Origin: Isurus oxyrinchus
Lineage: Eukaryota
Reading direction: 5' to 3'
NCBI GenBank assembly: GCA_026770705.1
Contig: JANJGN010000150.1
Span: 806,001-870,000, forward strand
DNA length: 64,000 nucleotides
Part shown: one piece after another, positions 13,797 through 64,000 of the stretch
Layout of the letters: each line of letters starts with the position of its first letter
How positions within the stretch are numbered: the stretch's first letter is position 1
Notes under the pieces: model-generated
What the model saw: only the letters and a program-made list of their open reading frames with translations
Database searches by the model: none
Told to the model about the DNA's origin: nothing
Position numbers and translations under genes: made by a program

Positions 13797-13926
13797 NNNN
13801 NNNNNNNNNNNNNNNNNNNNNNNNNNNNNNNNNNNNNNNNNNNNNNNNNNNNNNNNNNNNNNNNNNNNNNNNNNNNNNNNNNNNNNNNNNNNNNNNNNNN
13901 NNNNNNNNNNNNNNNNNNNNNNNNNN
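13797..13926. other. Assembly gap; others at 50353-50489, 51265-51447, 59096-59331, 60253-60428, 61653-61788, 63119-63285
   Basis: N runs, mostly next to CA/GT microsatellites. Confidence 1.
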
Positions 13927-13994: not shown

Positions 13995-14291
13995 CTTGTA
14001 CAGTTAGTACGAGGGTCCGCTCCGATGAAACAGATGGATATCTCACTCTGCAGCTGAGAGTGTGTCCGTGGTGTTTGAGTGATGGGATCAGGGTCAGAAC
14101 AGAAGTATAGGTCAGAGTGACACCATGCTGAGTTACAGTGTTTGAGACTGATCCAGGTACGTCAGTGGGAATGTCCCAGGTTAAGACAGGTGCTGCTGTT
14201 CCATTGCACGTTGTGTTGAAGGTGCAGCTCACATCCACACGCTTTCCTGCAATAATTTCAGCAGGGAATATCGTGGGTTGATCTGTGAAAT
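13995..14291 (-). CDS. Gene A C2-set Ig exon (Siglec domain 2)
   Basis: 297 nt, phase 1-1; CTFNTTCNG with the extra Cys, LTW, LSCRV. Confidence 0.92.
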
Positions 14292-15014
14292 CTAACACAC
14301 AGAGAATGGATCCTTTTAGAGAAATATAACGTGAAGCATCAGTTCAAATAGAAATCACAGTCCCACAAGAGAAAGCACTTTTACAAGGATGATATCAGAT
14401 CTGAGAGATTACAATGATCAGGAGAGAATTTCCTGCTTTGAGACTTTGGTGTTTCTGTCTCCCAGCTTAATACACGTTCACTCCGAGACACTTGAACTGA
14501 TAATAATGGGTGAGGGTGGAGGAGCAGACCAGAGTTTGGAGTGCACTACCCCATCATTCACTCAGCGATCTGGGCCATTTATTACTTTGCAATTTGTGGG
14601 AGCTTGCTGTGCGCAAATTGGCTGCTGTGTTTCTCACATTACAACAGTAACTACAATTCAGGAATCAGCTCATTGGCTGTGAAGTGATTTGGTCCGTGCT
14701 GAGGTGGTGCAAGGTGCTATAGAAATGTGAATCTTCTGTCGATATGTCAGACTTCGAGACAGGATTGGAGAGATCGATGGGAGTGGATAACCTGATAACA
14801 TTGATGGACACAGTCAATATATTTATCATTGATATTAAAGTGAGTATTAGAGGTTGCTTTAGGACTGAACTGGAAGCTATCACCAGGTTATTGAGAATCA
14901 GACATTGTGTTATAATAACCTATGTTTTGTGTTAATATGTAAACGTCACAGTTTGCGTTATTTCCCATTGAGTGTTGAAAGTGAATTGTTGAGTAATTAT
15001 AACACAGCACTTAC

Positions 15015-15380
15015 CAGAAATGTGAAGCTGGGTTACAGGATAGTAGCTATATCTATTTCTGCTGTCAAATTCTATTCTGAAATAATAAGGTCCTGCATCT
15101 TCCCGTCTGATGTTGTTTATAATCAGAGAACAGTCGCCATCTTTCAGGTCTCCAGACAGCCGGGTCCGATGGTGGAACCGTGGTAACTCGTGACTGTGAT
15201 CCTTGGAGTGAAAGGCTATAGACGATGTTCCCCGTTTCTCGTTATTAAACCAGACTCCATTTCGTGGTTGGCTTTCCAAATGTGATGGATAACTGTAATG
15301 ACATGGAATCTGTACACACGAACCTTCCTGCGCTGTCACCTCTCGTGGAGTGTCACCTTTCCACTCTTGTGACAGTCCAA
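15015..15380 (-). CDS. Gene A V-set sialic-acid-binding Ig exon
   Basis: 366 nt, phase 1-1; EGSCVQIPC...GDCSLII...DAGPYYFRIE has the Siglec Cys pattern and essential Arg. Confidence 0.93.
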
Positions 15381-16680: not shown

Positions 16681-16890
16681 AGACAGCCGGGTCCGATGGT
16701 GGAACCGTGGTGACTCGTGACTGTGATCCTTGGAGTGAAAGGCTATAGACGATGTTCCCCGTTCCTCATTATTAAACCAGACTCCACCTCGTGGTTGGTT
16801 TTCCAGACACGATGGATAACTGTAACGACACGGAATCTGTACACACGAACTTTCCTGAGCTGTCACCTTTCCACTCTTGTGACAGTCCAA
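16681..16890 (-). pseudogene. Truncated, frameshifted duplicate V-set exon in a gene A intron
   Basis: Close copy of the 5' part of 15015-15380; 17-nt deletion between GGTGACA repeats; homology stops at TRLS. Confidence 0.88.
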
Positions 16891-18713
16891 CTAGGGAGAG
16901 AAATATCAATATTTAACTCTGGATGGTTTGTGGATCCACTGAACCCGATATTTACAGATGAGGCTGAATTGGGAGGATGGTCAACACTGAGGACGACGAG
17001 ACTAGGAGCGGTGATCGATATTCCACCTCTCACACATATCCTGACGAGGCTTGCCAATAAATTTTGGATTGTGGTCTTTATTGATCTCTCTGGGCACATA
17101 AAATAAACTGAAAATGTCCCCATAGGGGTGGGATTTTCTGGCCCCACCCACTTCCATGATTGTCCGGTCCGGCTGAAAGCCAATGGATTTATGTCTGTCC
17201 CAGTCTCAGAAACTATCCCATCAACTCAGTTCATGACATAACATTGAAATATGCAGAAAGATTCAACAATATTGGCAGTTTCAAGGGAGCTGCAACATTA
17301 CACCTGCAGGAGAATGCAAGTCTGTCAGACTCCTTGCATTAAAATTAATACAATCCAACTTTGCCACGCTATCTTGAGCCTTAAATGGCCAATAATTTCT
17401 ATGCCTTCCAGGTTCATTTGCTCTCTTCTAATTTTGGCTGTGCATCTCTCTCTGTTGAATCTCCTCTCGGGATCCCATCCCCTGCCATATTAGTTTAAAG
17501 CCTCCTCAATTGCATCAAGGGTATAATGTCAATTGAAACCAGGGACAACATCAAAGAATGACAATCACACAGATCAATGTGAGCAATTAAAGAAACCTCC
17601 AGACAATTTTGCCACCACAAGATCTCGACATAACAGCAGGTTACCTCTACGCTTTAGAGAATCAAATATTCAACAGATCTATACACTTATGTAATTGTCA
17701 AGAAATATGAAAATGATACCAGGAACCTCTTGTTCCCTCTCCTTCTCAAAGATCCATCCCTGCAGCAGGAGCCTGAAGAGTTACTGATGTGGGGCTTAAT
17801 TTATCAGATTGTAGAATGATCCGGAACAGAAGGATGCCAGAAGGCCCATCGAGCCTGTGCTGGGCCTTTGAAAGATCTGTCCAATTAATCCCACTCTAAC
17901 CTCTGCTCTCTCCTCCACAGCCCTGCAAAATGTTACCTTCAAGTATTTATCCAGTTCCCCTTCTGAAAGTTCCTGTTGAATCTGCTTCCACCGGCCTTTC
18001 AGGCAGTGAGTCAATGGTCTCTCTCTGAGCTGCAAAGTGCTAATGTTCTGAGAACTTTAAACACTGCAGCAGATCAGAGACAATCATGATAACTCAGAAT
18101 ATTTGACAGTTTTACACACGGACAGCTTTGCCTTCCTTCTCTCTTTCAGTTATCTTGCTCCCTTATTGAAGTATCTAGCAAGGTGAGAATGGACAGGAAG
18201 TGTGACACTGAACAGCCTGTCTATTCTAGGAGCTGCTGTGCTGTCTTCATGGGAAATTCTGACAAAATCAGCAAAAGAGACAAAATTTCAGGGCATTGTT
18301 ATCCGAGTCCCAGCATCAGGATAGACCTCATCCCCCAGTTGGTATCCCTGAATCTCTATTCAGCCGATCGCTCCCCTGTCACTGGCTGAGCTACACTGGC
18401 TCCCAGTCCAGCAATGACTCAAATTTCAAATTCTCATCATTGATTTCTTACCCCACCATCCCCCCTCTACACTCCCGATCCCTGTAACCTGCTCCAACCC
18501 TAAAAACCTCTGAGATCTCTGCTCTCCTCCAATTCTGCTGTCAGACAGGGAGTCAGTGTATACCACTGAGCACAGGGGTGATGGGTGAATGGGACTTGGT
18601 GTGAGTTTGTGCACTGGCTCACTGCTGAATCGGTTCCCAATCACAGCTCAATAAGAATGATCTTTTACAAAGACTATTAGCCATAAACCTGTCCGAGCTG
18701 ACGATGTTATTAC

Positions 18714-19345: not shown

Positions 19346-21965
19346 GTAACCAGTGAGAAGATCGAGGATGTTTTGTGCTCTCAGCAAAACGTTTACCATG
19401 TGATGATCTGTCAGCTCAAATTTGGGCAGCTGTAGTCATGAAGCTTCTCCATTGGCTCCGTGGGTTTAGACTCCTCCCCCTCACCTCGGAGGCTGAAACT
19501 CAGGCGATAAGAGTTCCCAATACAGGTCTCTGGCCTTATGATACATTTCAACGATCCCTGTTATCATTACGGAGGGAGTGCTGCACTGTCAGCGGGAGTT
19601 TACTGTGGGATTGCTGCTCTATCAGAGGGTCAGTACTGAGGGAGTGCTGCACTGTCAGAGGGTCAGTACTGAGGGAGTGCTGCACTGTCGGAGGGTCAGT
19701 ACTGAGGGAGTGCTGCACTGTCATAGGGTCAGTAATGAGGGAGTGCTGCACTGTCAGAGGGTCTGTACTGAGTGAGTTCCGCACAGGTGGAGGGTCAGTA
19801 TTGAGGGGGTGCCGGACTGTGGGAGGGTTTGTACTGACGTAGAGCGGAGTGCGAGGAGATATCCTTTCATGACAAAGTTTAACTGGAATTTATTTAAACA
19901 CAATTCTTGTACTGTGTGTTATTGCAAAAGAAAGGATTTGAGGAACTAACTCTTGTTCCCGTAAGCCTAAAAATAATTTTCACTGATTTCTATGATTTAG
20001 CATTGAAACCTCCCTCTTTGGGCACCAGTCTTGATTGAAACAACTCGCACAGCACTGTGGGAGGGTGAGTACTGAGGGAATGCTGCACTGTGGGAGGGTG
20101 AGAACTGAGGGAGTGCTGCACTGTGGGAGTGTGAGTACTGAGGGAGTGTTGCACTGTGAGAGGGTCAGTACTGAGGGAGTGCTGCACTGTGGGAGTGTGA
20201 GTACTGAGGGAGCGCTGCACTGTGGGAGTGTGAGCACTGAGGGAGTGCTGCACTGTGGGAGAGTGAGTACTGAGGGAGTGCTGCACTGTCAGAGGGTCAG
20301 TAATGTGGGAGTGCTGCACTGTCACAGGGTCAGTAATGAGGGAGTGCTGCACTGTCACAGGATCAGTAATGTGGGAGTGCTGAACTGTCGGCGGGTCTGT
20401 ACTGAGTGAGTTCCGCACAGTCAGAGGGTCATTATTGAGGGGGTGCTGGACTGTGGGAGGGTTAGTACTGAGGTAGAGTGGAGCGTGAGGAGATATCCTT
20501 TCATGGCAAAGTTTAACTGGAATTTATTTAAACAGAGAGTCTTGTACTGTGTGTTATTGCAAAAGAAAGGATTTGAGGAACTAAGTCTTGTTCCCGTTAG
20601 CCTAAAAATAATTTTCAACGATTTCAATGATTTAGCAATGAAACCTCCCTCTTTGGGCATCAGTCTTGATTGAAACAACTCACACAGCACTTCGGGAGAG
20701 TGAGTACTGAGGGAGGGCTGCACTGTGGGAGAGTGAGTACTGAGGGAGTGCTGCACTGTGGGAGCGTCAGTACTGAGGGAGGGCTGCACAGTGGGAGGGT
20801 GAGCACTGAGGGAGTGCTGCACTGTGGGAGGGTGTGTACTGAGGGAGTGCTGCACTGTGGGAGGGTGAGAATTGAGGGAGTGCTGCACTGTGGGATCGTC
20901 AGTACTGAGGGAGTGCTGAACTGTTGGAAGGTCAGTAGTGAGGGAGGGATACAGTGTCAGAAGATCAGTCCTGTGGGAGTGCTGCACTGTCAGAAGGTGT
21001 GTACCGAGGTAGTGCTGCACACAGCCAGACAATGCCTTGGTTATGATGTGTCCACACAGCAGGACTGGGGAGCACCAGGTATAAGGAAAAGTTTCAGCTT
21101 GCTGAGGAGAAGAAGGAGAATCTCTCGTTCCAGGTTTCTCTCCGTACATTAAGAAGCAGGCATGCCGATGTTTCATTGCACTCTGTCTGCTGATGGGAGT
21201 CCGCTTGGAAATTGCTGTTTGTGCTGATGGAAAGAATAAGCTTTTCATAAATCGAGGGATTGAGTACAAACACAGGGAGGTTATGCTGAACATTTATAAA
21301 GCTCTGGTTAGGTCACAACTAGAGTATTGTGTCCAGTTCTGGTCTCCTCACTTTGGGAAGGAAGTGAGGGTCCTTGAGAGGGTGGGGAGGAGATTGAGCA
21401 GAATGGGTCCAGGGATGAGGGATTTTAGCTACAAGGTTGGGTTGGAGAAGCTGGGGTTGTTCTCCTTGGAGCAAAGGAGATTGAGGGGGGATCTGATCGA
21501 GGTGTACAAGATGATGATGGGTTTAGATACGGTAGACAAAGAGAAGCTGTTGCCATTAGCTGATGGGACAAGGACTGGGGGACACAGATTGAAGGTTTTG
21601 GGCAGAGGGGGATGTGAGGAGGAACTTTTTTACACAGCGAGTGGTAATGAGCTGGAACTCACTGCCTACAAGGATGGTGGAAGCGGAGACGATGAACGAT
21701 TTCAAAAGGAAATTGGATGGACACTTGAGGGGAAATAAACTCACAGGGATACGGGGATAGAGAGGGGGAATGGGACTGAGTGGATTGCTCTACAGAGAGA
21801 CAGCATGGACTCAATGGGCTGAATGGGCTCCCACTGTGCTGGAATGCCTCTCTGATACGACGAAGGTGATTCTAACCAGGACACTGACCAGTTTCATTAC
21901 AACTTAACCCAACATCACACATTATTTGTCCGCACTGACTGACCAGATTGTTGCTGTACAAAGCT

Positions 21966-22105
21966 TCAAACAGTCTGTCGACTTCCTTTCACTGTTTGTC
22001 TCTCCCAGACACAGACTCCAGTGATAGTGATAACCACAGCCACAAGGAATATCACAGCTCGTATTCCCAGGATCAGGATCACGTGCAGAATCTCTCCTCC
22101 ACTGT
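21966..22105 (-). CDS. Gene C TM + short-tail exon with intramembrane Arg (YSGGEILHVILILGIRAVIFLVAVVITITGVCVWERQTVKGSRQTV*), activating type
   Basis: Acceptor gtgttctctag; phase 1 matches the C2 donor at 23767; Arg codon at 22061-22059; TGA at 21968-21966. Confidence 0.85.
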
Positions 22106-23766
22106 CTAGAGAACACACAGAAAGAAATCATCACTGACTCTCCGCTTTCAATCTCTCACTCTGGCTGAACAATCAAGCTTCATATCACTGCAACATTTGC
22201 TGTAATATTGACCCATCCACTGGGATTCAATGTGGAATGAATGTTTTCATTGTAAACACTCCAAGAGTGGACAATCGGAACTTTCCCCTTAGCGTGGAAC
22301 ATTGGTGAGAATGGATCATTGTGCTGTTGGACTCCCTGTCCAATGTTTCTCTCCATCGCTGTGTACAGGATTGTGCTGTAGAAAATTCTGGAAATGTTTA
22401 GTGCAGGGTGGAAATCCATCTCGGATGCGTGTGCGAATCGGGCAGGATCGAGATGGACTCCCCCACGGACTTACACACCCCGCTAAATAAACAGTTCCAG
22501 TCTTTACCCAGAGAGAGGGGAGAATGTGGAACTCACTCCCACTGGGAGTGGTTGAGGTGAACAGTATCGATGTATTTAAGGGGCAAGATGGTCGGTAACC
22601 AGAGGGGCACAGATTGACGAACCGGAGGGGGAGATGAGGAGAATTTGTTTTGACAGAGCGAGTTGTTGTGATCTGGAAGGTGCTGCCTGAAAGGGCGGTG
22701 GAAGCAGATTCAATAGGAACTTTCAAAAGGGAAATTGGATAAACACTTGAAGGAGGAAGATGGGGGCAAAGTGGAGTGGTGGTTAGTGGATCTGATTGGA
22801 TAGAACATTGAAAGACCTGGCACAGGCACAATGGGCTGAATGGCCTCCTACTGTGCTGTATCATTCTCCGCTTCCATGATCTCTCCCCCAGTCAGTAACC
22901 ACTCCAGATCCCTCTTGAAGGTGACAGAGAGACAGCAACCACCACACCCACTGACAGCACATTCCCGAGGATCCCTACTCTCTGGGAAAAGATGAACTCC
23001 CCAACATCCAGCCTATTCCTGCTTCCCAGAGAGTGTAAACACTTCAGGGAGGCGCTGAGGAAGTTTTCAATAAAATGACATCAAATCTACCGTTTGAGAA
23101 ATAATTGAATTCCGATGAACTCCCAGCTTGTGTAGCAAACTGGGAAGTAGATTTGCTTGAAAAGCTGGGAAACACAAGGATTAAGTGCTACAATGCCACC
23201 ACTGGTGGGAGGCTGTAACTACAGTGTGACGTTTACATAGGCAGTCATCATTATAAACAGGGGCTTTGGACATAATGGGCACGGAAATAGTGAGAACAGG
23301 ATGTAAGCTTTTCATCAGCAGGAATTCTCTTACTAAACCTCTCCACCTCTCTCTTACTCTCAGATTCACAAAAAAATCACAGAATCAGATAAAGAGGAGT
23401 TGGGACTAGTTATTCGTCAATGGGTTAGGTTTCAGGTAGCTCCTTAAAGGGAGAGAGAGAGTTGTAGAAGCAGAGAGTATCTATGAGTGCCTCTATGCAT
23501 CTGAGTGTTTGTACGAGTAATTTCCATATTCTTCTATAAATATGAATGGGAACACAAATCCCAGAATTCAGCCCACGCTCCAGTGCAGTACTGAGGGAGG
23601 TCAGGTAACCCATCAGGGAGTCTTGTGCTAGTGTGTTTGTTTGTGAGTGTGTCTTTGTGTGTGGTCATATATGTGTGTCTGCACGTGTCTATTTAGGTCT
23701 GTACGTTTGAGGGTGTTTGTGTAGTATTCGAATCTGAGAGAGATGTTGAAGTCTGTGTACACTCAC

Positions 23767-23919
23767 ATTCCACAGTAATGGTTATGAACCCCTCCACTGC
23801 TCCATGTTCATTCTCTGCCACACACTGATAGTCTCCAGTGTCCCTGGATGTAACGTGAGGAATCACCAACCACAGCTCATTGTTGGAACTTGTTCTATTC
23901 ATTTGGACATTAAGATGTC
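23767..23919 (-). pseudogene. Gene C 5'-truncated stalk C2 exon
   Basis: 3' half (NRTSSNNELW...ITVE) matches the 282-nt C2 family; donor intact, 5' half and acceptor absent. Confidence 0.85.
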
Positions 23920-24442
23920 ATGGCAGGAATCAAGAAGCCCGTTCACAGGATTACCAACAGAAAGTGAACAACAATTTATACTTAATGGGAAGACAGTGCT
24001 GATTGGTTGGCAAGTGGTCTCTGATAGGTGGAGGTGTTGCCGTGGAGAATGCTGTGTGCGAGATGTAAAGTTTAGACAGCTTGTCTCTTCATTCAGCAAT
24101 AATCATATAAAGATCAATTAACTTCTATCGACTGTGAAGCATTTTGAGAGGAATGAGAATGTGGATACTGAGAATGGGCTGCACTGTCAGAGGGTCAGCG
24201 CTGAGGGAGTGCTGATGTAGAATGAAAGATGTCGGTACAGTTAATGCTTTTCATCATTGATATTAAAGTGATTTTTAGAGGTTGCTTTAGGACTGAACTG
24301 GAAGCTATCACCAGGTTATTGAGAATCAGACAGTGTGTTATAATAAGCTGTGTTTTGTGTTATTATGTAAACGTCACAGTTTGTGTTATTTCCCACTGAG
24401 TGTTGGATGTGAATTGTTGAGTAATTATAACACAGCACTTAC

Positions 24443-24816
24443 CAGAAACGTGAAGCTGGGTTACAGGATACTGGCTGTAACTATTCCTGCTGTCAAACTC
24501 TATTCTGAAAAAATAAGGTCCTGCATCTTCCCGTCTGATGTTGTTTATAATCAGGGAACAGTCGCCATCTTTCAGATCTCCAGACAGCCGGGTACGATGG
24601 CGGAATCTTTGATCCCTGTGATTGTGACCCTCGGAGTGAAAGGCTATAGACCATTTAGGCTGTGGGTTCCCATCTATTCCTTTCAACCAGATTATGCACG
24701 TGATCTCCCTACGAAATTTGATAAGTAACTGTAATGACATGGAATCTGTACACATGAACCTTCCTGTGCTGTCACCTCTCGTGGAGTGTCACCTTTCCAC
24801 TCTTGTGACAGTCCAA
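24443..24816 (-). pseudogene. Gene C V-set exon with 1-nt frameshift
   Basis: 374 nt; the frame reaches TAA after ...GRSRA near 24694; the other frame continues IIWLKG...YFFRIE with Arg retained. Confidence 0.88.
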
Positions 24817-25519
24817 CTGGGGAGAGAAATATCAATATTTGACTCTGGATGGTTTGTAGATCCACTAGACTCGATATCCACCCCCTCCATCACTGGGGCA
24901 CAGTGGCTGCAGTGTGGACCATCTGCAGGACACACAAGGAACTCCCCAAGGTTTCACAACAGATAGAAGAGAATCCTGGACACAGGAGTGGACAAGTTCA
25001 TTCTACATTGGCTCATGGTCCTCAGGACCCTCTTTAGTGAAGCCAGTCTTCCACCCAACACAGTGTCTACAAGATAGACAGGGAAACTGTGTAAATATCT
25101 CATCTCTCAACACTGAATGGGCTGAGCTTCAGTTTAACTTTCAGTATTTTTAAATTTCCATATTGTGGTTGCTATGGTGAAACTGTGCAGGAAGTGTGAG
25201 GGCTGGACTCTCTGTCTATTCTCACTGCAGCTGTGATGTGGTCGTGGTGATTCTCAGTAAAATGAAACCCTCTGATCTCCTCCATCGCCGAGGTTTAGGG
25301 AGTGAATTCCAGTGCTCAGGTCCCAGGCAGCTGTAGGCACGGCCGCCGGTATTGGAGTGATGGGAATCGGGGGATGGTCAAGAGGCCAGAATTGGAGTAA
25401 CACAGAGACCTGGGAACTTGATTGGTTGCGTTGCAGGAGGTTACAGAGATAAAGAGATAAGAATGATCTTTTACAAAGACTGTTAAATATAAATCTGTCC
25501 AAGCTGACGATGATATTAC

Positions 25520-25580
25520 CTTGGAGAAGTGACAAGAGGAAGTAGATTTCCCGATTATTGTCCACTCCCAGATATTCCAT
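25520..25580 (-). CDS. Gene C leader exon (MEYLGVDNNREIYFLLSLLQ)
   Basis: Paralog of 18714-18795; phase-1 donor; the ATG used by gene A is ATA here. Confidence 0.6.
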
Positions 25581-26008
25581 CCACTTCTCACTCTCAAGCT
25601 GTGAAAGAGAAAGGAGTTAATGAGACCTCACCTCTTGTCCAGCACCTTTCGAGAGATCAGAACTGCTTTTAGACAATGTCTTCACAGACTAATTTGATTC
25701 TCTGTGGGATGATAGGTGCTCTGCAGAGAGTTACAAGGCTTTAAGAAAGACAAACAATGAAGGATTTGCATTTCTATAGCACCTTTCACCACCTCAGGGC
25801 ATCCCAAAGCTCATGTCTCTGCACTTCCCTCATCCCCTGAGCTAGAAAGATGTTCTGTACAACAGACTTGAGCCTCACACCCAGATCTCAATAATCAGTA
25901 GAAATCTTTCAAAGGCATCAATCATTGGAATCTGTCTTTATAAAGTCACAACATCAACAAAGGACGGTGTTGGTGGTGGAAGTGAATTCCAATCGTTCCG
26001 TTACTTAC

Positions 26009-50211: not shown

Positions 50212-50975
50212 GTGAGTGTACACAGACTTCAACATCACTCACACACACACACTCACACATGCAAAAACACTCATGTGTAGACACAAACATGCACGCTTAC
50301 ACACAAACATACGTTCAAACACATACACAGAAACACACACAAACTCAACTCANNNNNNNNNNNNNNNNNNNNNNNNNNNNNNNNNNNNNNNNNNNNNNNN
50401 NNNNNNNNNNNNNNNNNNNNNNNNNNNNNNNNNNNNNNNNNNNNNNNNNNNNNNNNNNNNNNNNNNNNNNNNNNNNNNNNNNNNNNNNNACAGACACGCG
50501 CATACACACAAATACAAACTCACGTGCAGAAGTACACACACAAGTGTGAGCTCCCTCTCCTCTCTCAGTTCTGCACTGGAGTCATGGTATCAGCTCCCAT
50601 TCTGTGCTGAAGGAAGGTAAACTCCAGATCAGCAAGACCCTGAATTGGATGAGCAACCTCCTGAACAGAGAAATGTAGATTTAGCCCTCAGTGCTCCATC
50701 GATCAAATACAATTCATTGCCTATCAAGCCCTTGGGGACATCTTGAGAGTGTTAAAGGATGTTTCTTTCATTCTAGAGGGTTAGCAACTCTACTGGTGGG
50801 AGGAAGCAACTGCAGTGTGACAGTTTACATAGGAAGTGTCCATTATAAATATGACAGTAATTTTTCCTGAGGGAAGGTACCTGGAAAAGCATTCCAACAT
50901 CAGATACAGAGAGATGATGCATGGAGTCTTGCTGTGCACTATGCTTGCTCACATTAAAATCTTTATTTCTTTTAG

Positions 50976-51256: not shown

Positions 51257-52115
51257 GTGAGTTANNNNNNNNNNNNNNNNNNNNNNNNNNNNNNNNNNNN
51301 NNNNNNNNNNNNNNNNNNNNNNNNNNNNNNNNNNNNNNNNNNNNNNNNNNNNNNNNNNNNNNNNNNNNNNNNNNNNNNNNNNNNNNNNNNNNNNNNNNNN
51401 NNNNNNNNNNNNNNNNNNNNNNNNNNNNNNNNNNNNNNNNNNNNNNNATAATTATCCACACACAGTCATACACATACAAGCACATACACAGGAAAATACA
51501 CACCCATCTCAAACACACACACACATTCTTGCCCACACATAGACACACACATGCACATACTCTCACTCATGGACAGACCTAGACACACAGACACATGCGC
51601 ATGCGCACACACAGACACATGTGTGCATACACACACAAACACACTCACATGTGCAGAAACACAAACACACAGATACACACACGTGAGTTCCCTCTCCTCT
51701 CTCAGTGCCGCACTGGAGTCTCGGTATCAGCTCCGATTCTGTGTTGAAGGAAGGTAAACTCCAGATCAACAAGACCCTGAATTGGATGAGCAACCTCCTG
51801 AACAGAGAATTGTAGATTTACCCCTCAGTGCTCCATCAATCAAATACAATTCATTGCCTGTCCAGCCCTTTGCGAAATCCTGAGGATGTGAAAGCAAGCT
51901 TCTTTCATTCTAGATGGACAACACCTCTACTGGTGGGAGAATGCAACTGCAGTGTGACAGTTTACATAGGCAGTGTCCATTAAAAATGTGGCATAAGACG
52001 TTATCCTGAGGGAAGTTACCTGGAAATGCATTCAGACATCAGATACAGAGAGATGATGCATGGAGTCTTGCTGTGCAATAGGTTTGCTCACATTAAACAC
52101 TTGATTTGTTTTTAG

Positions 52116-52397
52116 ATGCACCACAGGATCTCTCATTTACTTCGCTTAATATGATTTACGCTTCATGGATCAATATAATTGAGGGGAATTCTGCAGTGAT
52201 AATCTGCTCTGTCGAGAGCTTCCCAGCTTCTAACCTGACGTGGCGACATCTTAATGTCCCAATGAACAGAACAAGTTCCAACAATGAGCTGTGGTTGGTG
52301 ATTCCTCACGTTACATCCAGGGACACTGGAGACTATCAGTGTGTGGCAGAGAATGAACATGGAGCAGTGGAGGGGTTCATAACCATCACTGTGGAAC
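52116..52397 (+). CDS. Gene D stalk C2 exon 3
   Basis: 282 nt, AG/GT intact. Confidence 0.82.
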
Positions 52398-53207
52398 GTG
52401 AGTGTGGAGATACATTTGTTTGTTTGTTGTCTCCGTGGTCTCCGTGGAGCCATTGGGATCGTGTTGTTTTTAATCCAGTTTTCTTCAATCCTCGCTCAAC
52501 CTACGTTATCCACACACCCAATTTTTCCTCTCCCTTTCTGTTTTTGCTCTCGGTTTCTCCTTCAATGGTTGTGAGGACAAGGCTGTCAGGTCTTCGTTTC
52601 CAATCTCCGTACTTGACGACCTTTCTCTCTCTAACTGTCGTGAACAACCCTTTTAATTGCTGAACTTCTCATTCTTTAATTGATAAATATTATATATAAA
52701 TGTTACATGTTGAAATGCAACACCTGTATTCATAAATTGCTTAGAAATTACTAAACATTCAACAGCCAGTGAAGTATTATCGAAGTGAGCTCACTGTTGT
52801 AATGTAGGAAACACAGGTACTGATTTGTGCACAGCAAGATCCCGCAAACCACCGTGTGATAATGAGCTGATAGTCGATTATTTCAGTGAGGTTGGTTGTT
52901 ACATGTGTAGAGACTACATACCCTTTAGGGAGGGAAGCATGTCTCGATGTAGATGTGACTCCAGTCTCAGACACCAGCATGGTTAACTCACACCTGCCCT
53001 CTGAACTGGTCTCCCAGTTTGGGACAAACCAGTGGTTCAGGAGGAAGACCCCCCACCACCTTCTCAAGGGGAAACTAGGGATGGACAATAAATGTCAGCA
53101 TTGCCCGAGAATGAGTATTTAAACACTGAGTGAGTGTATCGCTTCTCGAGATACATCGGAGCATCATTGTAAACCTGTAGTGCAGTAATTAATGGCTGTT
53201 TTTACAG

Positions 53208-53304
53208 GTAGAGACTCCAGTAAATGGACAGTAGGATTGTTCACGGCTGGGATCATGTTGAGTGTTTTCCTGGCTGGAATCTTCATCTTCATCTGTGTGA
53301 GAAA
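53208..53304 (+). CDS. Gene D TM exon, same sequence as gene A TM
   Basis: Reverse complement of 11917-12013. Confidence 0.88.
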
Positions 53305-58500: not shown

Positions 58501-59464
58501 CCTGATATGTAGTGCATGGAGGGATATTACTCTCCAGGGTGTGTGTGCATCACAGTGCTCATTCACATGTGTTCCATGTGCACCTACATCAGCTGTGTAG
58601 ACATACAAGCCTCAATGCTGCATCCGGGGAATGTGCCATGTCTCACACCTTAGCTGCAGCACGACCCTTCCCTTGGAGCTCTGTGTGCTCGAGACCTATT
58701 TTGTTATTTTTTCCTGCCGTCTCTGTGTCCCCCGACCCGGGAGTGAAAATCCGGCCTTAACTTCCACTTTCTAGTGTCTGAGACAAGAGGCAATGAGTGA
58801 GTGGGCTGACGGTCAGGATTAATGCTGTTAATCTGTGTTTGAGGGGCTGTGAATTCTCGGGGGACTAGTTACTCTCTGAGCTGCAGCTTCCAAATCCTTA
58901 TTTGATGCCGTGCATGTGGGGTTGGAAGATTTTTTTTAAAACCACAGGCAGTTCACAGAAACCCACAGGAAACCCACAGAGAGACAGTCACTGAGAAAGT
59001 CACTCACTCCTTGTGGTTTCACCTTTTAACCACATCCTGTCTGTGTGGCTTAAATGTTAAACACAGTGGCCAGACTCAAGGAGGTTTCACTCTGTNNNNN
59101 NNNNNNNNNNNNNNNNNNNNNNNNNNNNNNNNNNNNNNNNNNNNNNNNNNNNNNNNNNNNNNNNNNNNNNNNNNNNNNNNNNNNNNNNNNNNNNNNNNNN
59201 NNNNNNNNNNNNNNNNNNNNNNNNNNNNNNNNNNNNNNNNNNNNNNNNNNNNNNNNNNNNNNNNNNNNNNNNNNNNNNNNNNNNNNNNNNNNNNNNNNNN
59301 NNNNNNNNNNNNNNNNNNNNNNNNNNNNNNNCAGACAGACACAAACACACACATTCACACACACACACATATTCACTCACACACACACATTCACTCACAC
59401 ACTCATTCACACACACAAACACACACACAAAGACAATATCCCAATGACAACAAACTGTGATTAA

Positions 59465-60497
59465 GAGCTTCCTACAACTTAACTAAGAGACCAAAGACAT
59501 ATTGAACTGTCTAAAAGCGACCTGATTTTCAAAGAAATACAAGATTGTACACAGATCAAAAATGGCTGACACAAGTCACCTGATTGCTGATACTGTGAAG
59601 TTGATCACTTCTCTGGAAAGGTTCAAATGAATTGCACTGCAGACCTGTTGCATGGAAGTTCACGCCTGGGGTGTGTCAGGGTCCACTTCAAATAGAGACA
59701 CTCTTAAAAGGAAGGCATTAAAATGTAAAGTGCTGGACTTTGATCAGCTGTAGTTCAATCAAAACATTGGGAACTTCTCACCAAGCGGATAATCATCAGC
59801 CATTCAAAACCCCCTGTGGAGGATACAATGCCCCCGTCTCCTGTTGATTTATATCTTGAAATGCATCAAAGGTTTCAGAGATGCAAAGATAAAAAAATGG
59901 GAATACTTGGTCTATAACAATGAATGCAAAACATGCTGATCGAATTGACTTCAGGGATATACAGACAGGAGTTTAACAAATGGTTCTGCCAAGCAGATAT
60001 AAGAGAAAGGAGGGGAAAAAGAAATATGGCAGTCTTCCACAAACACTGCTGGAAAAGAGCAGAAATGATTTCTCCCTCTCTCTCTCTCTGTCTGAAGCTA
60101 ACAGAATGTCTTCAACAATGTGCAAGTCTGAGCCAGATAAAATACAGGAATCTACAGAAAACCAACTATTTTAAAACAGCTTCAAACTTCACAGCCTACG
60201 CTGTAGTACAAGCAAACGACTCCTTTAATTTTTTATTGGACTCTATAATTATNNNNNNNNNNNNNNNNNNNNNNNNNNNNNNNNNNNNNNNNNNNNNNNN
60301 NNNNNNNNNNNNNNNNNNNNNNNNNNNNNNNNNNNNNNNNNNNNNNNNNNNNNNNNNNNNNNNNNNNNNNNNNNNNNNNNNNNNNNNNNNNNNNNNNNNN
60401 NNNNNNNNNNNNNNNNNNNNNNNNNNNNTGCATGTGAGCCTGTCTGTGTGTATCTGTCTGTGTGTGTATGTCTGTGCACCTATCTGTGTGTATGTGC

Positions 60498-61652: not shown

Positions 61653-61809
61653 NNNNNNNNNNNNNNNNNNNNNNNNNNNNNNNNNNNNNNNNNNNNNNNN
61701 NNNNNNNNNNNNNNNNNNNNNNNNNNNNNNNNNNNNNNNNNNNNNNNNNNNNNNNNNNNNNNNNNNNNNNNNNNNNNNNNNNNNNNNNGTGAGTGTGTGT
61801 CTGTCTATG

Positions 61810-64000
61810 TACCCTTGTGAGTGAGTGTGTGTGTGTGTGTACATGTGTGCGTGTGGATTGTTGCATCTTTATTATTAACGTTATTTAAAAATAGTGATCA
61901 CACAAGCCTGGTTTCTAAGGAAATGAAACTGCAAACAATTTACAGTAAAGTGAAACATACAGGAATAATCTATTTATTTTGAGCTGATGATATATAATTA
62001 TACATGAGGCATGTTGCTAATTTCAAATGTCATCTGAAATATGGCAGGTCTGACAGAGCAGCATTCCCTCAGTGCCCACCCTCTGACAGTGCAGCACTCC
62101 CTCAGCATTGACCCTTTGAGAGTGCAGCACTCCTTCAGTATTGACCCTCTGGAAGTGCAGCACTCCCTCAGCACTGACCCTCTGGGAGTGCAGCTCTCCC
62201 TCAGTACCGACCCTCTGGAAGTGCAGCACTCCCTCTGTGCTAACCCTCCAACAGTGCAGCACTCTCTCAGTACTGACCCTCTGACAGTGCAGCACTCCCT
62301 CAGTACTGACCCTCCAACAGTGCAGCACTCCCTCACTGGGAAGAGTCCGTCCGCATTTTAAGCTGAAACCTTGAGACGGTCTCAAAATCCCAACCTTCCA
62401 TCTCAGAGACAGAGAGTGCGTTTATGTGAGAGAGAGAGACAATGTATGTGTGAGAGACTGAGAGTGTGTATGTGTGAGAGAGCAAAAGAGAGGTAGAGTG
62501 TGTGTGCATGAGAGAGGGAGGTAGCTTGTGTGTGTGAGAGAGAGAGTGTGTGTGAGAGAAAGAGAACGTCTGTGAGAGTGTGAGAGAATTTATGTGTGAG
62601 AGAGAAAGATAGAGAGAATGTGCGTGTGAGATAGTGTGTGTGCAAAAGAGAGTGTGTGTCTGTGAGAGAGTGTTTGTGTATGTGAGAGTGTGTGTGTGAG
62701 ATCATGTGTGTGTGTGTGTTTGAGAAAGAGGGTGTGTGTGTTTGAGAGAGGGAGTGTGCGAGAAAAAGTTGGTGTGAGTGTTTGAGGGAGGGGGAGATTG
62801 TGTGTTTGAGACAGGGAGTGAGAGAGAACATGTGTGTGAGAGAGAGAGTGTGTGTGTATGTGTGTGTGTGAAAGAGAAAGTGTTTGTGCAAAACAGTGTG
62901 TGTTTGAGAGTATGTGTGCATGTGTGAGTGTGTGTGTGTGTGTGCTAATGTTTGTGTTTGTGTGTGTGTGAGGGTTTGTGTGTGAGTGAGTTTGTGCGTT
63001 TGTGTGCATGTGTGTGTGCATGTGTGTGCGTGAAAGAGTGTTTGTGCAAAAGAGTGTGTGCTTGAGAGTATGTGTGCATGTGTGAGTGTGTGTGTGTGCT
63101 AGTGTTTGTGTGTGCGTGNNNNNNNNNNNNNNNNNNNNNNNNNNNNNNNNNNNNNNNNNNNNNNNNNNNNNNNNNNNNNNNNNNNNNNNNNNNNNNNNNN
63201 NNNNNNNNNNNNNNNNNNNNNNNNNNNNNNNNNNNNNNNNNNNNNNNNNNNNNNNNNNNNNNNNNNNNNNNNNNNNNNNNNNNNNACAGTTACACACGTT
63301 GCTAGGGACCACTTTTCCGCCTCTCTGTCAGACTGTGTGTATCTGACAGCAGGTCAGGCAGAAATAGTCCAGAATGCGCTGTGGTTTTGTAGCATTGAAA
63401 CAACGACATGAACTAAATGAGTGCTGCACCAAATAAAGACATGGAGTTACCACACCAAAAAACCACGTGACTTCCCCAGTTTCACATCTCCCTCAAACAC
63501 AGAAAAACTGGGTTAACACTGACCCTCCTCCCAGAGCCAGTTCACCTTGTGTCCGATGCAGTCAGGAGAGGAAGATCATCTCTCCTCCGATCCTGCTAAA
63601 CTGAACATTTCCAGAATTAGATCAGCTCCCTGAAGTGTCTCCAGTTAGACATTCATCTGACAGGATTGACTCTACAACCCTGGGGACTCATTCTCCTGTA
63701 AGTAAAACACTTGCTGCTCCTGTCAAATCTCTTCTGTACAGCATGGTCTCTGGATGTCCCAGAACACTTTACAATAGAGTTCACCCTTTTTTCGAAGTGT
63801 GGTTACTGTTGTAATGTAGGAAACGCAGCAGCCAATTAGCGCACAGCAAGCTCCCACAAACAGCAATGTGATCACCTGTTTTTGGTGATGTTGGGTGAGG
63901 GATAAATATTGGTCCCAGGACACCGGGCAGATCTCCCCCCTGCTCTTCCTCCAAATAGTGGCTGTGGGATCTTTCACACCCGCCCGAGAGGGCAGACGGG
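61810..64000. repeat. Right arm of the inverted repeat, running off the window end
   Basis: Reverse complement of 47324-49200. Confidence 0.92.

What the first reader, a model, noticed from the sequence alone, without database searches (positions are those of the whole stretch)
21966..22105. Hidden TM exon with intramembrane arginine and tyrosine-free tail: activating Siglec
Seen: a phase-1 exon missed by the ORF track encodes ILHVILILGI-R-AVIFLVAVVITITGVCVW followed by ERQTVKGSRQTV*. It is unrelated to the other TM exons. Known: a basic TM residue with a short tail marks receptors that pair with DAP12 or FcR-gamma (Siglec-14 Arg; Siglec-15/16 Lys). Inference: this is the activating counterpart of gene A, whose leader and V exon gene C shares.
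Basis: partly seen in the sequence, partly recalled or inferred. Interest (0 to 1): 0.85.

Follow-up and report, generated by a model that had tools for sequence, protein, structure and literature searches.

The report
Shark Siglec activating membrane-anchor exon
This is a real, expressed shark exon that gives Siglec-type immune receptors a membrane anchor with a buried arginine and a 12-residue tail, the usual mark of an activating receptor. The gene copy it sits in here looks broken, and the same exon type was already known from automatic annotation and from this scan.

Summary
On the minus strand an AG acceptor opens a phase-1 exon at 22105. It encodes a 29-residue hydrophobic stretch with one Arg, then a 12-residue tyrosine-free tail and a stop at 21968-21966.

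It is not a chance ORF. A search of 1.84 billion proteins found 8 real hits, all at the extreme C-terminus of shark Ig-superfamily gene models from Scyliorhinus, Chiloscyllium, Hemiscyllium, Rhincodon and Mustelus. The ILGIRA core and the Arg are invariant in 12 of 12 sequences, and no tail has a tyrosine. S. canicula models already named Siglec-13 and Siglec-14 isoform X2 are leader-V-C2-this cassette.

Contigs of public runs that hold spliced RNA use the predicted acceptor. They also use a donor at 21944 leading to a 3'UTR exon at 21223.

The upstream gene C V exon is 374 nt, frameshifted, with a premature TAA. Only half a stalk C2 exon lies between it and the cassette. The RNA joins the cassette to a C2-set exon that does not lie upstream of it in this window.

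The most likely reading is a recently disabled or polymorphic-null activating Siglec copy. The adaptor (FcR-gamma or DAP12) is untested. This scan had already found the same cassette on other pieces of this genome (s1-300793, s1-868598).

The parts
21966..22105 (-). Coding part of the cassette exon. It starts in phase 1 and encodes the membrane helix with Arg (ILGIRA core), the 12-residue tail ERQTVKGSRQTV, and the stop at 21968-21966.
   Evidence: sequence and translation; C-terminal homologues, Arg 12/12
21944..22105 (-). The full exon as used in RNA, 162 nt. The acceptor AG is at 22107-22106 behind a pyrimidine tract. The donor is TCTG|GTCAGT after 21944.
   Evidence: loose ends at 22107 in X1 and X2 and at 21944 in X1; for the sequence
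21224..21943 (-). A 720-nt 3'UTR intron (GT..AG) that holds a LINE fragment.
   Evidence: the loose letters at 21944 match 21194-21223 exactly, and the acceptor is ccatcAG|CACAAAC
21194..21223 (-). Start of the 3'UTR exon joined to the cassette exon. Its 3' end was not determined.
25520..25580 (-). Leader exon of gene C (MEYLGVDNNREIYFLLSLLQ), with a phase-1 donor AAG|GTAATA.
   Evidence: In one search the joint 25520 to 24816 (GT..AG) is seen in X1, but it cannot be told apart from gene A's transcript.
24443..24816 (-). Siglec V-set exon of gene C. It is 374 nt (not a multiple of 3), frameshifted near 24697, with an in-frame TAA at 24694-24692. It keeps the YFFRIE sialic-acid arginine motif.
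   Evidence: One search shows a window-like version in X1 record 7 and an in-frame variant in X2.
23767..23919 (-). The 3' half of a stalk C2 exon (HLNV...ITITVE plus its donor). The 5' half with the first Cys is missing.
   Evidence: 97% identical to 52245-52405, homology stops at 23919
13995..14291 (-). C2-set exon of gene A. It is the only exon in the window whose 3' end matches the exon joined to the cassette in RNA (1 synonymous mismatch in 27 nt). It lies 3' of the cassette.
15015..15380 (-). Intact V-set exon of gene A (366 nt), the paralogue of gene C's V exon.

Best explanation
The 22105-21944 exon is a genuine copy of a conserved shark 'activating cassette'. This is a phase-1 exon that can follow any phase-1 Ig exon. 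It supplies a membrane helix with a buried arginine (invariant ILGIRA core), a 12-residue tail without signalling motifs, and the stop codon, and it is followed by its own 3'UTR exon. Receptors that end with it most likely cannot signal alone. The arginine would pair with the membrane aspartate of a dimeric ITAM adaptor, and ligand binding would then activate the cell through Syk-type kinases. This is the opposite sign to the tyrosine-motif tail of neighbouring gene A. The Arg sits 18 residues from the cytoplasmic boundary, which slightly favours FcR-gamma-type geometry over DAP12, but this is inference. In this window the cassette itself is undamaged. The gene body in front of it (gene C) is a mosaic of an A-like leader and V exon with a frameshift and stop, followed by half a stalk C2 exon. 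This copy is therefore most likely the 3' end of a recently disabled or polymorphic-null activating Siglec. The productive V-C2-cassette mRNA seen in the RNA most likely comes from a near-identical paralogue or haplotype. Shown here: the exon, its conservation, use of its splice sites, and the damage in gene C. Inferred: adaptor pairing, activating sign, and which copy yields the mRNA.
For: Sequence, frame, acceptor and stop. Homologues: 8 real hits, all at the C-terminus, E down to 3e-13. They are NCBI models from five shark genera named CD33-like, Siglec-12/13/14, sialoadhesin-like, CD22-like and SLAMF9-like. The Arg and ILGIRA are invariant in 12/12 and no tail has a Tyr. P0011 and P0012 are leader-V-C2-cassette, with Pfam V-set, Ig_CD22 and C2-set_2 and best solved relatives Siglec-5 and CD33. 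In RNA, contigs of X1 and X2 stop matching at the acceptor and continue into the end of a C2-set exon, which gives ...SERTLVLTVQ-D-SGGEILHV... in frame. An X1 contig joins 21944 to 21223 across a GT..AG intron, with an exact and unique match in the window. Unspliced contigs 99.4% identical to the window cover the intron upstream of the exon (record 10). Damage in gene C: 374-nt V exon with TAA, half a C2 exon, and no C2-set exon upstream. The rule relating basic-residue position to adaptor comes from PMC8102735. High-frequency null alleles of human activating Siglecs are described in PMC6288428.
Against: No binding or signalling data exist, and human Siglec-14 uses an Arg with DAP12, so geometry does not decide the adaptor. 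The hydrophobic stretch is 29 residues, so the depth of the Arg in the membrane is ambiguous (position 5 to 11). The RNA evidence comes from assembled contigs of runs whose RNA label is a guess. They cannot separate this copy from near-identical paralogues, and the scan reports the same cassette on other pieces of this genome. An in-frame version of the gene-C-type V patch is expressed in the same sample, so a functional gene C allele may exist. The window-like frameshifted version is supported independently only by one contig of depth 4.6.
Confidence: 0.6

Rival explanations
1. Gene C is an intact activating Siglec (leader, V, then directly the cassette, a V-only receptor), and the frameshift is an assembly or single-individual artefact.
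For: The V donor and the cassette acceptor are both phase 1, so a direct splice is in frame. The whale-shark model P0006 is V-only plus cassette. An in-frame variant of the C-type patch is expressed in X2.
Against: No frame is open through the V exon. The lesion is one missing base plus two substitutions outside any homopolymer, and X1 record 7 reproduces the window's version. No 24443-to-22105 joint was listed. The listed junction at the acceptor is to a C2-set exon.
Confidence: 0.12
2. The locus is functional, but the assembly misrepresents it through collapsed or mis-joined haplotypes or paralogues. The true locus would carry a C2-set exon, and perhaps full stalk exons, between the V exon and the cassette.
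For: RNA joins the cassette to a C2-set exon that differs by one synonymous base from gene A's. The same transcripts use the 3'UTR exon of this locus. The region is full of near-identical duplicated modules and LINE fragments.
Against: Contigs of X2 match most of the window's stretch between V and the cassette piecewise at about 98.5-99.4%. The homology breakpoints at 24237 and 23919 are clean. The N runs sit in simple repeats, not at these breakpoints.
Confidence: 0.18
3. The membrane arginine does not recruit an ITAM adaptor. The cassette would make a decoy or non-signalling receptor, or it would pair with a different partner chain.
For: No adaptor was tested. Siglec-1 is an example of a Siglec without its own signalling module (PMC13358205).
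Against: An unpaired Arg conserved in 12 of 12 sequences across two shark orders, and in three receptor types, implies a conserved membrane partner. Short tail plus basic membrane residue is the standard adaptor-coupling signature.
Confidence: 0.08
4. The feature is a chance open frame in repeat-rich intergenic DNA.
For: It is flanked by LINE fragments on both sides.
Against: E = 3e-13 to C-terminal ends of shark receptors, and both splice sites are used in RNA contigs.
Confidence: 0.01

Closest known systems
Automatic NCBI gene models of catsharks: S. canicula 'sialic acid-binding Ig-like lectin 14 isoform X2' (P0012) and 'lectin 13' (P0011); S. torazame 'CD33-like' XP_072325011 (P0001)
   Same: They have the same cassette, 78-82% identical, with an identical ILGIRAVIF core and the same exon junction ...TVQ-D/Y-SGGE. 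Their V and C2 domains are 77% and 87% identical to the window's gene A exons.
   Different: Those models are complete leader-V-C2-cassette genes. The copy in this window follows a frameshifted V exon and half a stalk exon. They are predictions without published functional work.
Human paired Siglecs: activating Siglec-14 (with inhibitory Siglec-5) and Siglec-16 (with Siglec-11)
   Same: A Siglec V domain very similar to a linked receptor with a tyrosine-motif tail, a basic residue in the membrane helix, a short tail, and frequent null alleles of the activating member (PMC6288428; PMC13358205). P0012's best solved relative is Siglec-5.
   Different: Orthology to mammalian CD33-related Siglecs is not established, and the membrane exon shows no detected similarity to mammalian ones. 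The adaptor (DAP12 in humans) is unknown here. The shark cassette is also found on non-Siglec Ig receptors.
FcR-gamma-coupled receptors with an outer-leaflet Arg: KIR2DL4 and macaque activating KIR
   Same: An Arg near the extracellular third of the helix, about 16-18 residues from the cytoplasmic boundary, and a membrane-and-tail module spread by recombination between receptor genes (PMC8102735).
   Different: The sequences are unrelated. The shark helix has 10 further hydrophobic residues before the Arg, so its depth is ambiguous. Pairing was not tested.
Activating/inhibitory IgSF multigene families of fishes (NITR and LITR of teleosts, MDIR of skate), recalled from memory and not checked here
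   Same: Clustered Ig receptors occur in versions with either ITIM tails or charged membrane residues.
   Different: They have different Ig domain families, and no shared cassette with this sequence was detected (one search found only galeomorph shark hits).

Membership tests
Adaptor-coupled activating Siglec (Siglec-14/15/16 type) | Basic residue inside the membrane helix | tested here: met
   There is a single Arg in a 29-residue hydrophobic stretch. It is invariant in 12 of 12 homologues.
Adaptor-coupled activating Siglec (Siglec-14/15/16 type) | Short cytoplasmic tail without ITIM, ITSM or any tyrosine | tested here: met
   The tail is 12 residues, ERQTVKGSRQTV. No homologue tail has a Tyr.
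Adaptor-coupled activating Siglec (Siglec-14/15/16 type) | Intact Siglec V-set domain with the sialic-acid-binding arginine, encoded by the same gene | tested here: not met
   The V exon 24816-24443 keeps YFFRIE but is 374 nt, with a frameshift and a TAA at 24694-24692. The feature is met in homologues P0011 and P0012.
Adaptor-coupled activating Siglec (Siglec-14/15/16 type) | The exon is spliced into mRNA after Ig exons | tested here: met
   The acceptor at 22105 is joined to a C2-set exon end in X1 and X2, and the donor at 21944 is joined to 21223 in X1. The copy of origin cannot be assigned.
Adaptor-coupled activating Siglec (Siglec-14/15/16 type) | Physical association with DAP12 or FcR-gamma through the basic residue | not testable with these tools
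An unchecked note (s1-869613) reports an FcR-gamma-like gene elsewhere in this genome.
Paired receptor (activating/inhibitory twins) | Ectodomain nearly identical to a linked receptor with a tyrosine-motif tail | tested here: inconclusive
   The V exons of C and A are 84% identical overall and 95-100% outside a central patch of about 150 nt. Gene A has a TEYAQI motif tail. However, C's ectodomain is broken and lacks the C2-set domain.
Siglec family (V-set with C2-set_2, CD33/Siglec-5-like fold) | Sequence similarity of V plus C2 to solved Siglec structures | tested here: met
   P0012 against the PDB: Siglec-5 at 3e-28, CD33 at 4e-26, then MAG, Siglec-10 and Siglec-8. Window exons hit Pfam V-set, Ig_CD22 and C2-set_2.

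The most novel reading that the evidence does not exclude
Galeomorph sharks own a portable 'activating cassette': a membrane helix with Arg, a 12-residue tail and its own 3'UTR exon. Exon shuffling has attached it to Siglec-like, SLAM-like and possibly CD22-like receptor genes. This would have created paired activating/inhibitory lectin receptors independently of, and long before, the mammalian Siglec-5/14 and 11/16 pairs. This window would catch one such activating Siglec as a segregating null allele, paralleling the common human SIGLEC14 and SIGLEC16 null alleles.
Probability: 0.3. Interest if true: 0.6.

Novelty: new member of a known kind. Interest (0 to 1): 0.42.

Why it matters
Paired activating and inhibitory Siglecs are discussed mainly as a primate and mammalian answer to pathogens that mimic sialic acid. 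The cassette is conserved across carcharhiniform and orectolobiform sharks. That shows the same design (lectin head, buried arginine, no tail) exists in the oldest jawed-vertebrate lineage with adaptive immunity, and that one membrane module is reused by several receptor families. The cassette gives a concrete handle for asking which ITAM adaptor sharks use. This particular copy adds a possible example of the birth-and-death, or null-allele, dynamics typical of activating immune receptors. In practice, gene predictors miss or mis-join this 162-nt exon in dense receptor clusters.

Tried and rejected
No shark genomic DNA outside the window could therefore be read.
- The window was searched for a second cassette copy or a second C2-set exon of the right type. 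There is none.
- The search of earlier findings by sequence came back blank.
- No joint from the gene C V exon (24443) or the half stalk exon (23767) to 22105 appeared among the listed joints. Contigs show presence, not absence, and about 100 loose ends were not displayed.
- Depth figures were not used to rank exons, as the tool warns against it.
- The leader-to-V joint (25520 to 24816) cannot be credited to gene C, because the flanks are at least 95% identical to gene A's.
- Hit P0008 (10 short stretches, 47% identity) was set aside as low-complexity.
- The two search for homologous proteins region searches found no protein encoded by this window, so no public gene model for this copy was seen.
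- Literature searches for shark or cartilaginous-fish Siglecs with DAP12 or FcR-gamma found no study of such receptors.
- N runs were left untouched.

Full report
**1. What is at the coordinates**

The feature lies on the minus strand. Behind a pyrimidine tract and an AG at 22107-22106, the exon starts at 22105 in phase 1.
- It reads (x)SGGE, then 29 hydrophobic residues with a single Arg (…ILGIRAVIF…), then WERQTVKGSRQTV and TGA at 21968-21966.
- Among non-repetitive sequence it is the most hydrophobic 21-residue segment in the window.
- Its DNA (21842-22624) is single-copy in the window and is flanked by LINE fragments.
- It is unrelated to the membrane exons of the neighbouring genes (11984-11922, 53237-53299 and 33977-33915).

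**2. It is a conserved exon, not a chance frame**

The 45-residue translation, given by reference, was searched with phmmer against 1.84 billion representative proteins. There were 9 hits, 8 of them real, and each matched at its very last residues (E from 3e-13 to 4e-5). All are shark proteins:
- S. torazame: CD33-like, Siglec-12 and a SLAM-like hypothetical protein.
- Chiloscyllium punctatum: Siglec-13 and CD22-like.
- Hemiscyllium ocellatum: CD22-like.
- Rhincodon typus: sialoadhesin-like.
- Mustelus asterias: SLAMF9-like.

Two region searches added S. canicula 'Siglec-13' and 'Siglec-14 isoform X2', and a further S. torazame model. The alignment of the cassettes shows the following:
- The core ILGIRA-x-IF and a G-x-CV motif are invariant.
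- The Arg is present in 12 of 12 sequences.
- No sequence has a tyrosine after the Arg.
- The cassette always begins one residue after the end of an Ig exon, as expected for a phase-1 exon.

The S. canicula models are complete: leader, V-set, C2-set, cassette (272-273 aa). They hit Pfam V-set, Ig_CD22 and C2-set_2. Their best solved relatives are Siglec-5 (3e-28) and CD33. The window's gene A V and C2 exons are 77% and 87% identical to P0012.

**3. Expression and splicing**

Contigs of four public runs were laid on 21500-25700. The RNA label of these runs is only a guess. X1 nevertheless holds spliced molecules: it shows a joint from 25520 to 24816 with GT..AG on the minus strand, exactly the predicted leader-to-V splice.

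*At the cassette acceptor.* Contigs of X1 and X2 stop matching the window and continue with letters that are the 3' end of a C2-set exon. That exon end matches 14023-13997 with one synonymous difference. The junction reads …SERTLVLTVQ-D-SGGEILHV…, the same junction as in the catshark models.

*At the other end.* An X1 contig leaves the exon at 21944 (TCTG|GTCAGT). It continues with 30 letters that match 21223-21194 exactly and uniquely, behind an AG acceptor. The exon is therefore 162 nt (22105-21944). The stop lies 22 nt before a 720-nt 3'UTR intron, and a 3'UTR exon follows.

*Upstream intron.* Unspliced contigs 99.4% identical to the window cover the intron upstream of the exon (record 10). 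The runs are therefore from the same or a very close organism.

**4.

Gene C has a good leader exon (25580-25520). Its V exon is 84% identical to gene A's overall, and 95-100% outside a central patch. Three problems remain.
- **Broken V exon.** The exon is 374 nt against 366 nt in gene A. No frame is open through it, and the frame set by the leader ends at TAA 24694-24692.
- **No complete Ig exon before the cassette.** Homology to gene A stops at 24237. The only Ig sequence before the cassette is the 3' half of a stalk C2 exon (23919-23767), 97% identical to the stalk modules of genes B and D, with its first half missing.
- **The RNA partner exon is not upstream.** The C2-set exon that RNA joins to the cassette is not present upstream of it. 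The only such exon in the window is gene A's (14291-13995), which lies 3' of the cassette.

In the same sample, two versions of the C-type patch occur. One is the window's frameshifted version (X1 record 7, depth 4.6). The other has one more base and is in frame (X2), reading …FVGRSRVGIWLKG…, which resembles the bamboo-shark protein at this point. Whether these are alleles or paralogues cannot be told from contigs.

Earlier notes of this scan report the same cassette on other pieces of this genome. One of them closes a complete two-domain gene with a 12-residue tail (s1-868598, s1-300793). I could not read those pieces, so I treat the notes as leads only.

**5. Most likely mechanism**

*Shown.* This is a conserved, spliced terminal coding exon that provides a membrane anchor with an invariant Arg and a tail without motifs.

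*Inferred from established knowledge of paired immune receptors (PMC13358205; PMC8102735).* The Arg pairs with the membrane Asp of an ITAM adaptor dimer, so receptors that end in this cassette activate the cell.

*Which adaptor.* If the helix is anchored at the cytoplasmic W-ER boundary, the Arg lies 18 residues from the cytoplasm, at about position 5 of a 23-residue helix. That is the geometry described for FcR-gamma partners such as KIR2DL4 and macaque activating KIR, and not the central Lys of DAP12 partners. Two facts weaken this reading. Ten further hydrophobic residues precede the Arg, and human Siglec-14 pairs an Arg with DAP12. My odds are FcR-gamma-like about 0.5, DAP12 about 0.3, and other or none about 0.2.

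*This copy.* The simplest history is an activating Siglec of the V-(C2)-stalk-cassette type, as in S. torazame P0002 and C. punctatum P0003. It later lost the stretch from the intron after V to the middle of the last stalk exon, and acquired a small frameshifting lesion in V. The cassette itself carries no lesion, and its sequence and downstream splice are seen in RNA. The damage is therefore recent, or confined to one haplotype, or the assembly misrepresents the locus.

**6. Comparison with what is known, and novelty**

The kind is known: adaptor-coupled activating twins of inhibitory Ig receptors, including the human pairs Siglec-5/14 and 11/16, whose activating members are often null (PMC6288428). 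The shark cassette is already present in automatic NCBI models, and this scan has described it twice. I found no paper on it in the searchable library.

I therefore file it as a new member of a known kind. Two points are of moderate interest:
- One membrane module is reused by several receptor families.
- This copy may be a decaying or null activating gene.

One caveat on the reuse. The CD22-like models that carry the cassette also begin with the Siglec-type first exon read in another frame. They may therefore be chimeric predictions. The SLAM-like ones carry a more diverged cassette (68-71% identity) and look independent.

**7. Limits**

- All RNA evidence is from assembled contigs.
- N runs were not touched.
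- No adaptor sequence was available for a complex prediction.

Noticed in passing
window 21194-21943 (minus): The cassette exon is followed by a 720-nt GT..AG intron in the 3'UTR that holds a LINE fragment, and by a 3'UTR exon that starts at 21223. The stop codon lies 22 nt before this last junction.
   Followed up: yes
window 22008 and 24868 (run X1): The same 27 foreign letters follow both places, one inside the cassette exon and one in intron 1 of gene C. Both lie at possible cryptic GT donors. The letters are not in the window at up to 3 mismatches. This could be a cryptic splice to an exon outside the window or a library artefact.
   Followed up: partly
window 18775-18714 and 25580-25520; proteins P0004, P0005: The A-side leader exon has one extra base, so its upstream ATG reads MKYLGVENDQEILLPPVTSP in another frame. 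The bamboo-shark and epaulette-shark 'CD22-like' models start with this alternative-frame reading and end with the Arg cassette. This suggests chimeric gene models spanning a Siglec gene.
   Followed up: partly
window about 24712 (minus), run X2: One RNA contig joins the leader donor (25520) to a cryptic acceptor inside the V exon (tttcgtAG|GG). It skips the first ~105 nt, including the first Cys. The same contig carries the in-frame version of the C-type patch.
   Followed up: partly
window 16681-16951 (minus): A truncated V exon, cut after ...HHRTRLS and carrying a 17-nt deletion near its start, lies between the A-side leader (18753-18714) and gene A's intact V exon. It is another relic of duplication in the cluster.
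   Followed up: no
window 13797-13926, 50353-50489, 51265-51447, 59096-59331, 60253-60428, 61653-61788, 63119-63285: All seven N runs (130-236 nt) sit inside TG/CA-rich simple repeats. They look like masked repeats, not scaffold gaps. They were left untouched.
   Followed up: no
window 14292-14303 and 22106-22120 (minus): The acceptor regions of gene A's C2-set exon and of the cassette exon share the string tctgtgtgtt...tag. This may be chance or a trace of common origin.
   Followed up: no
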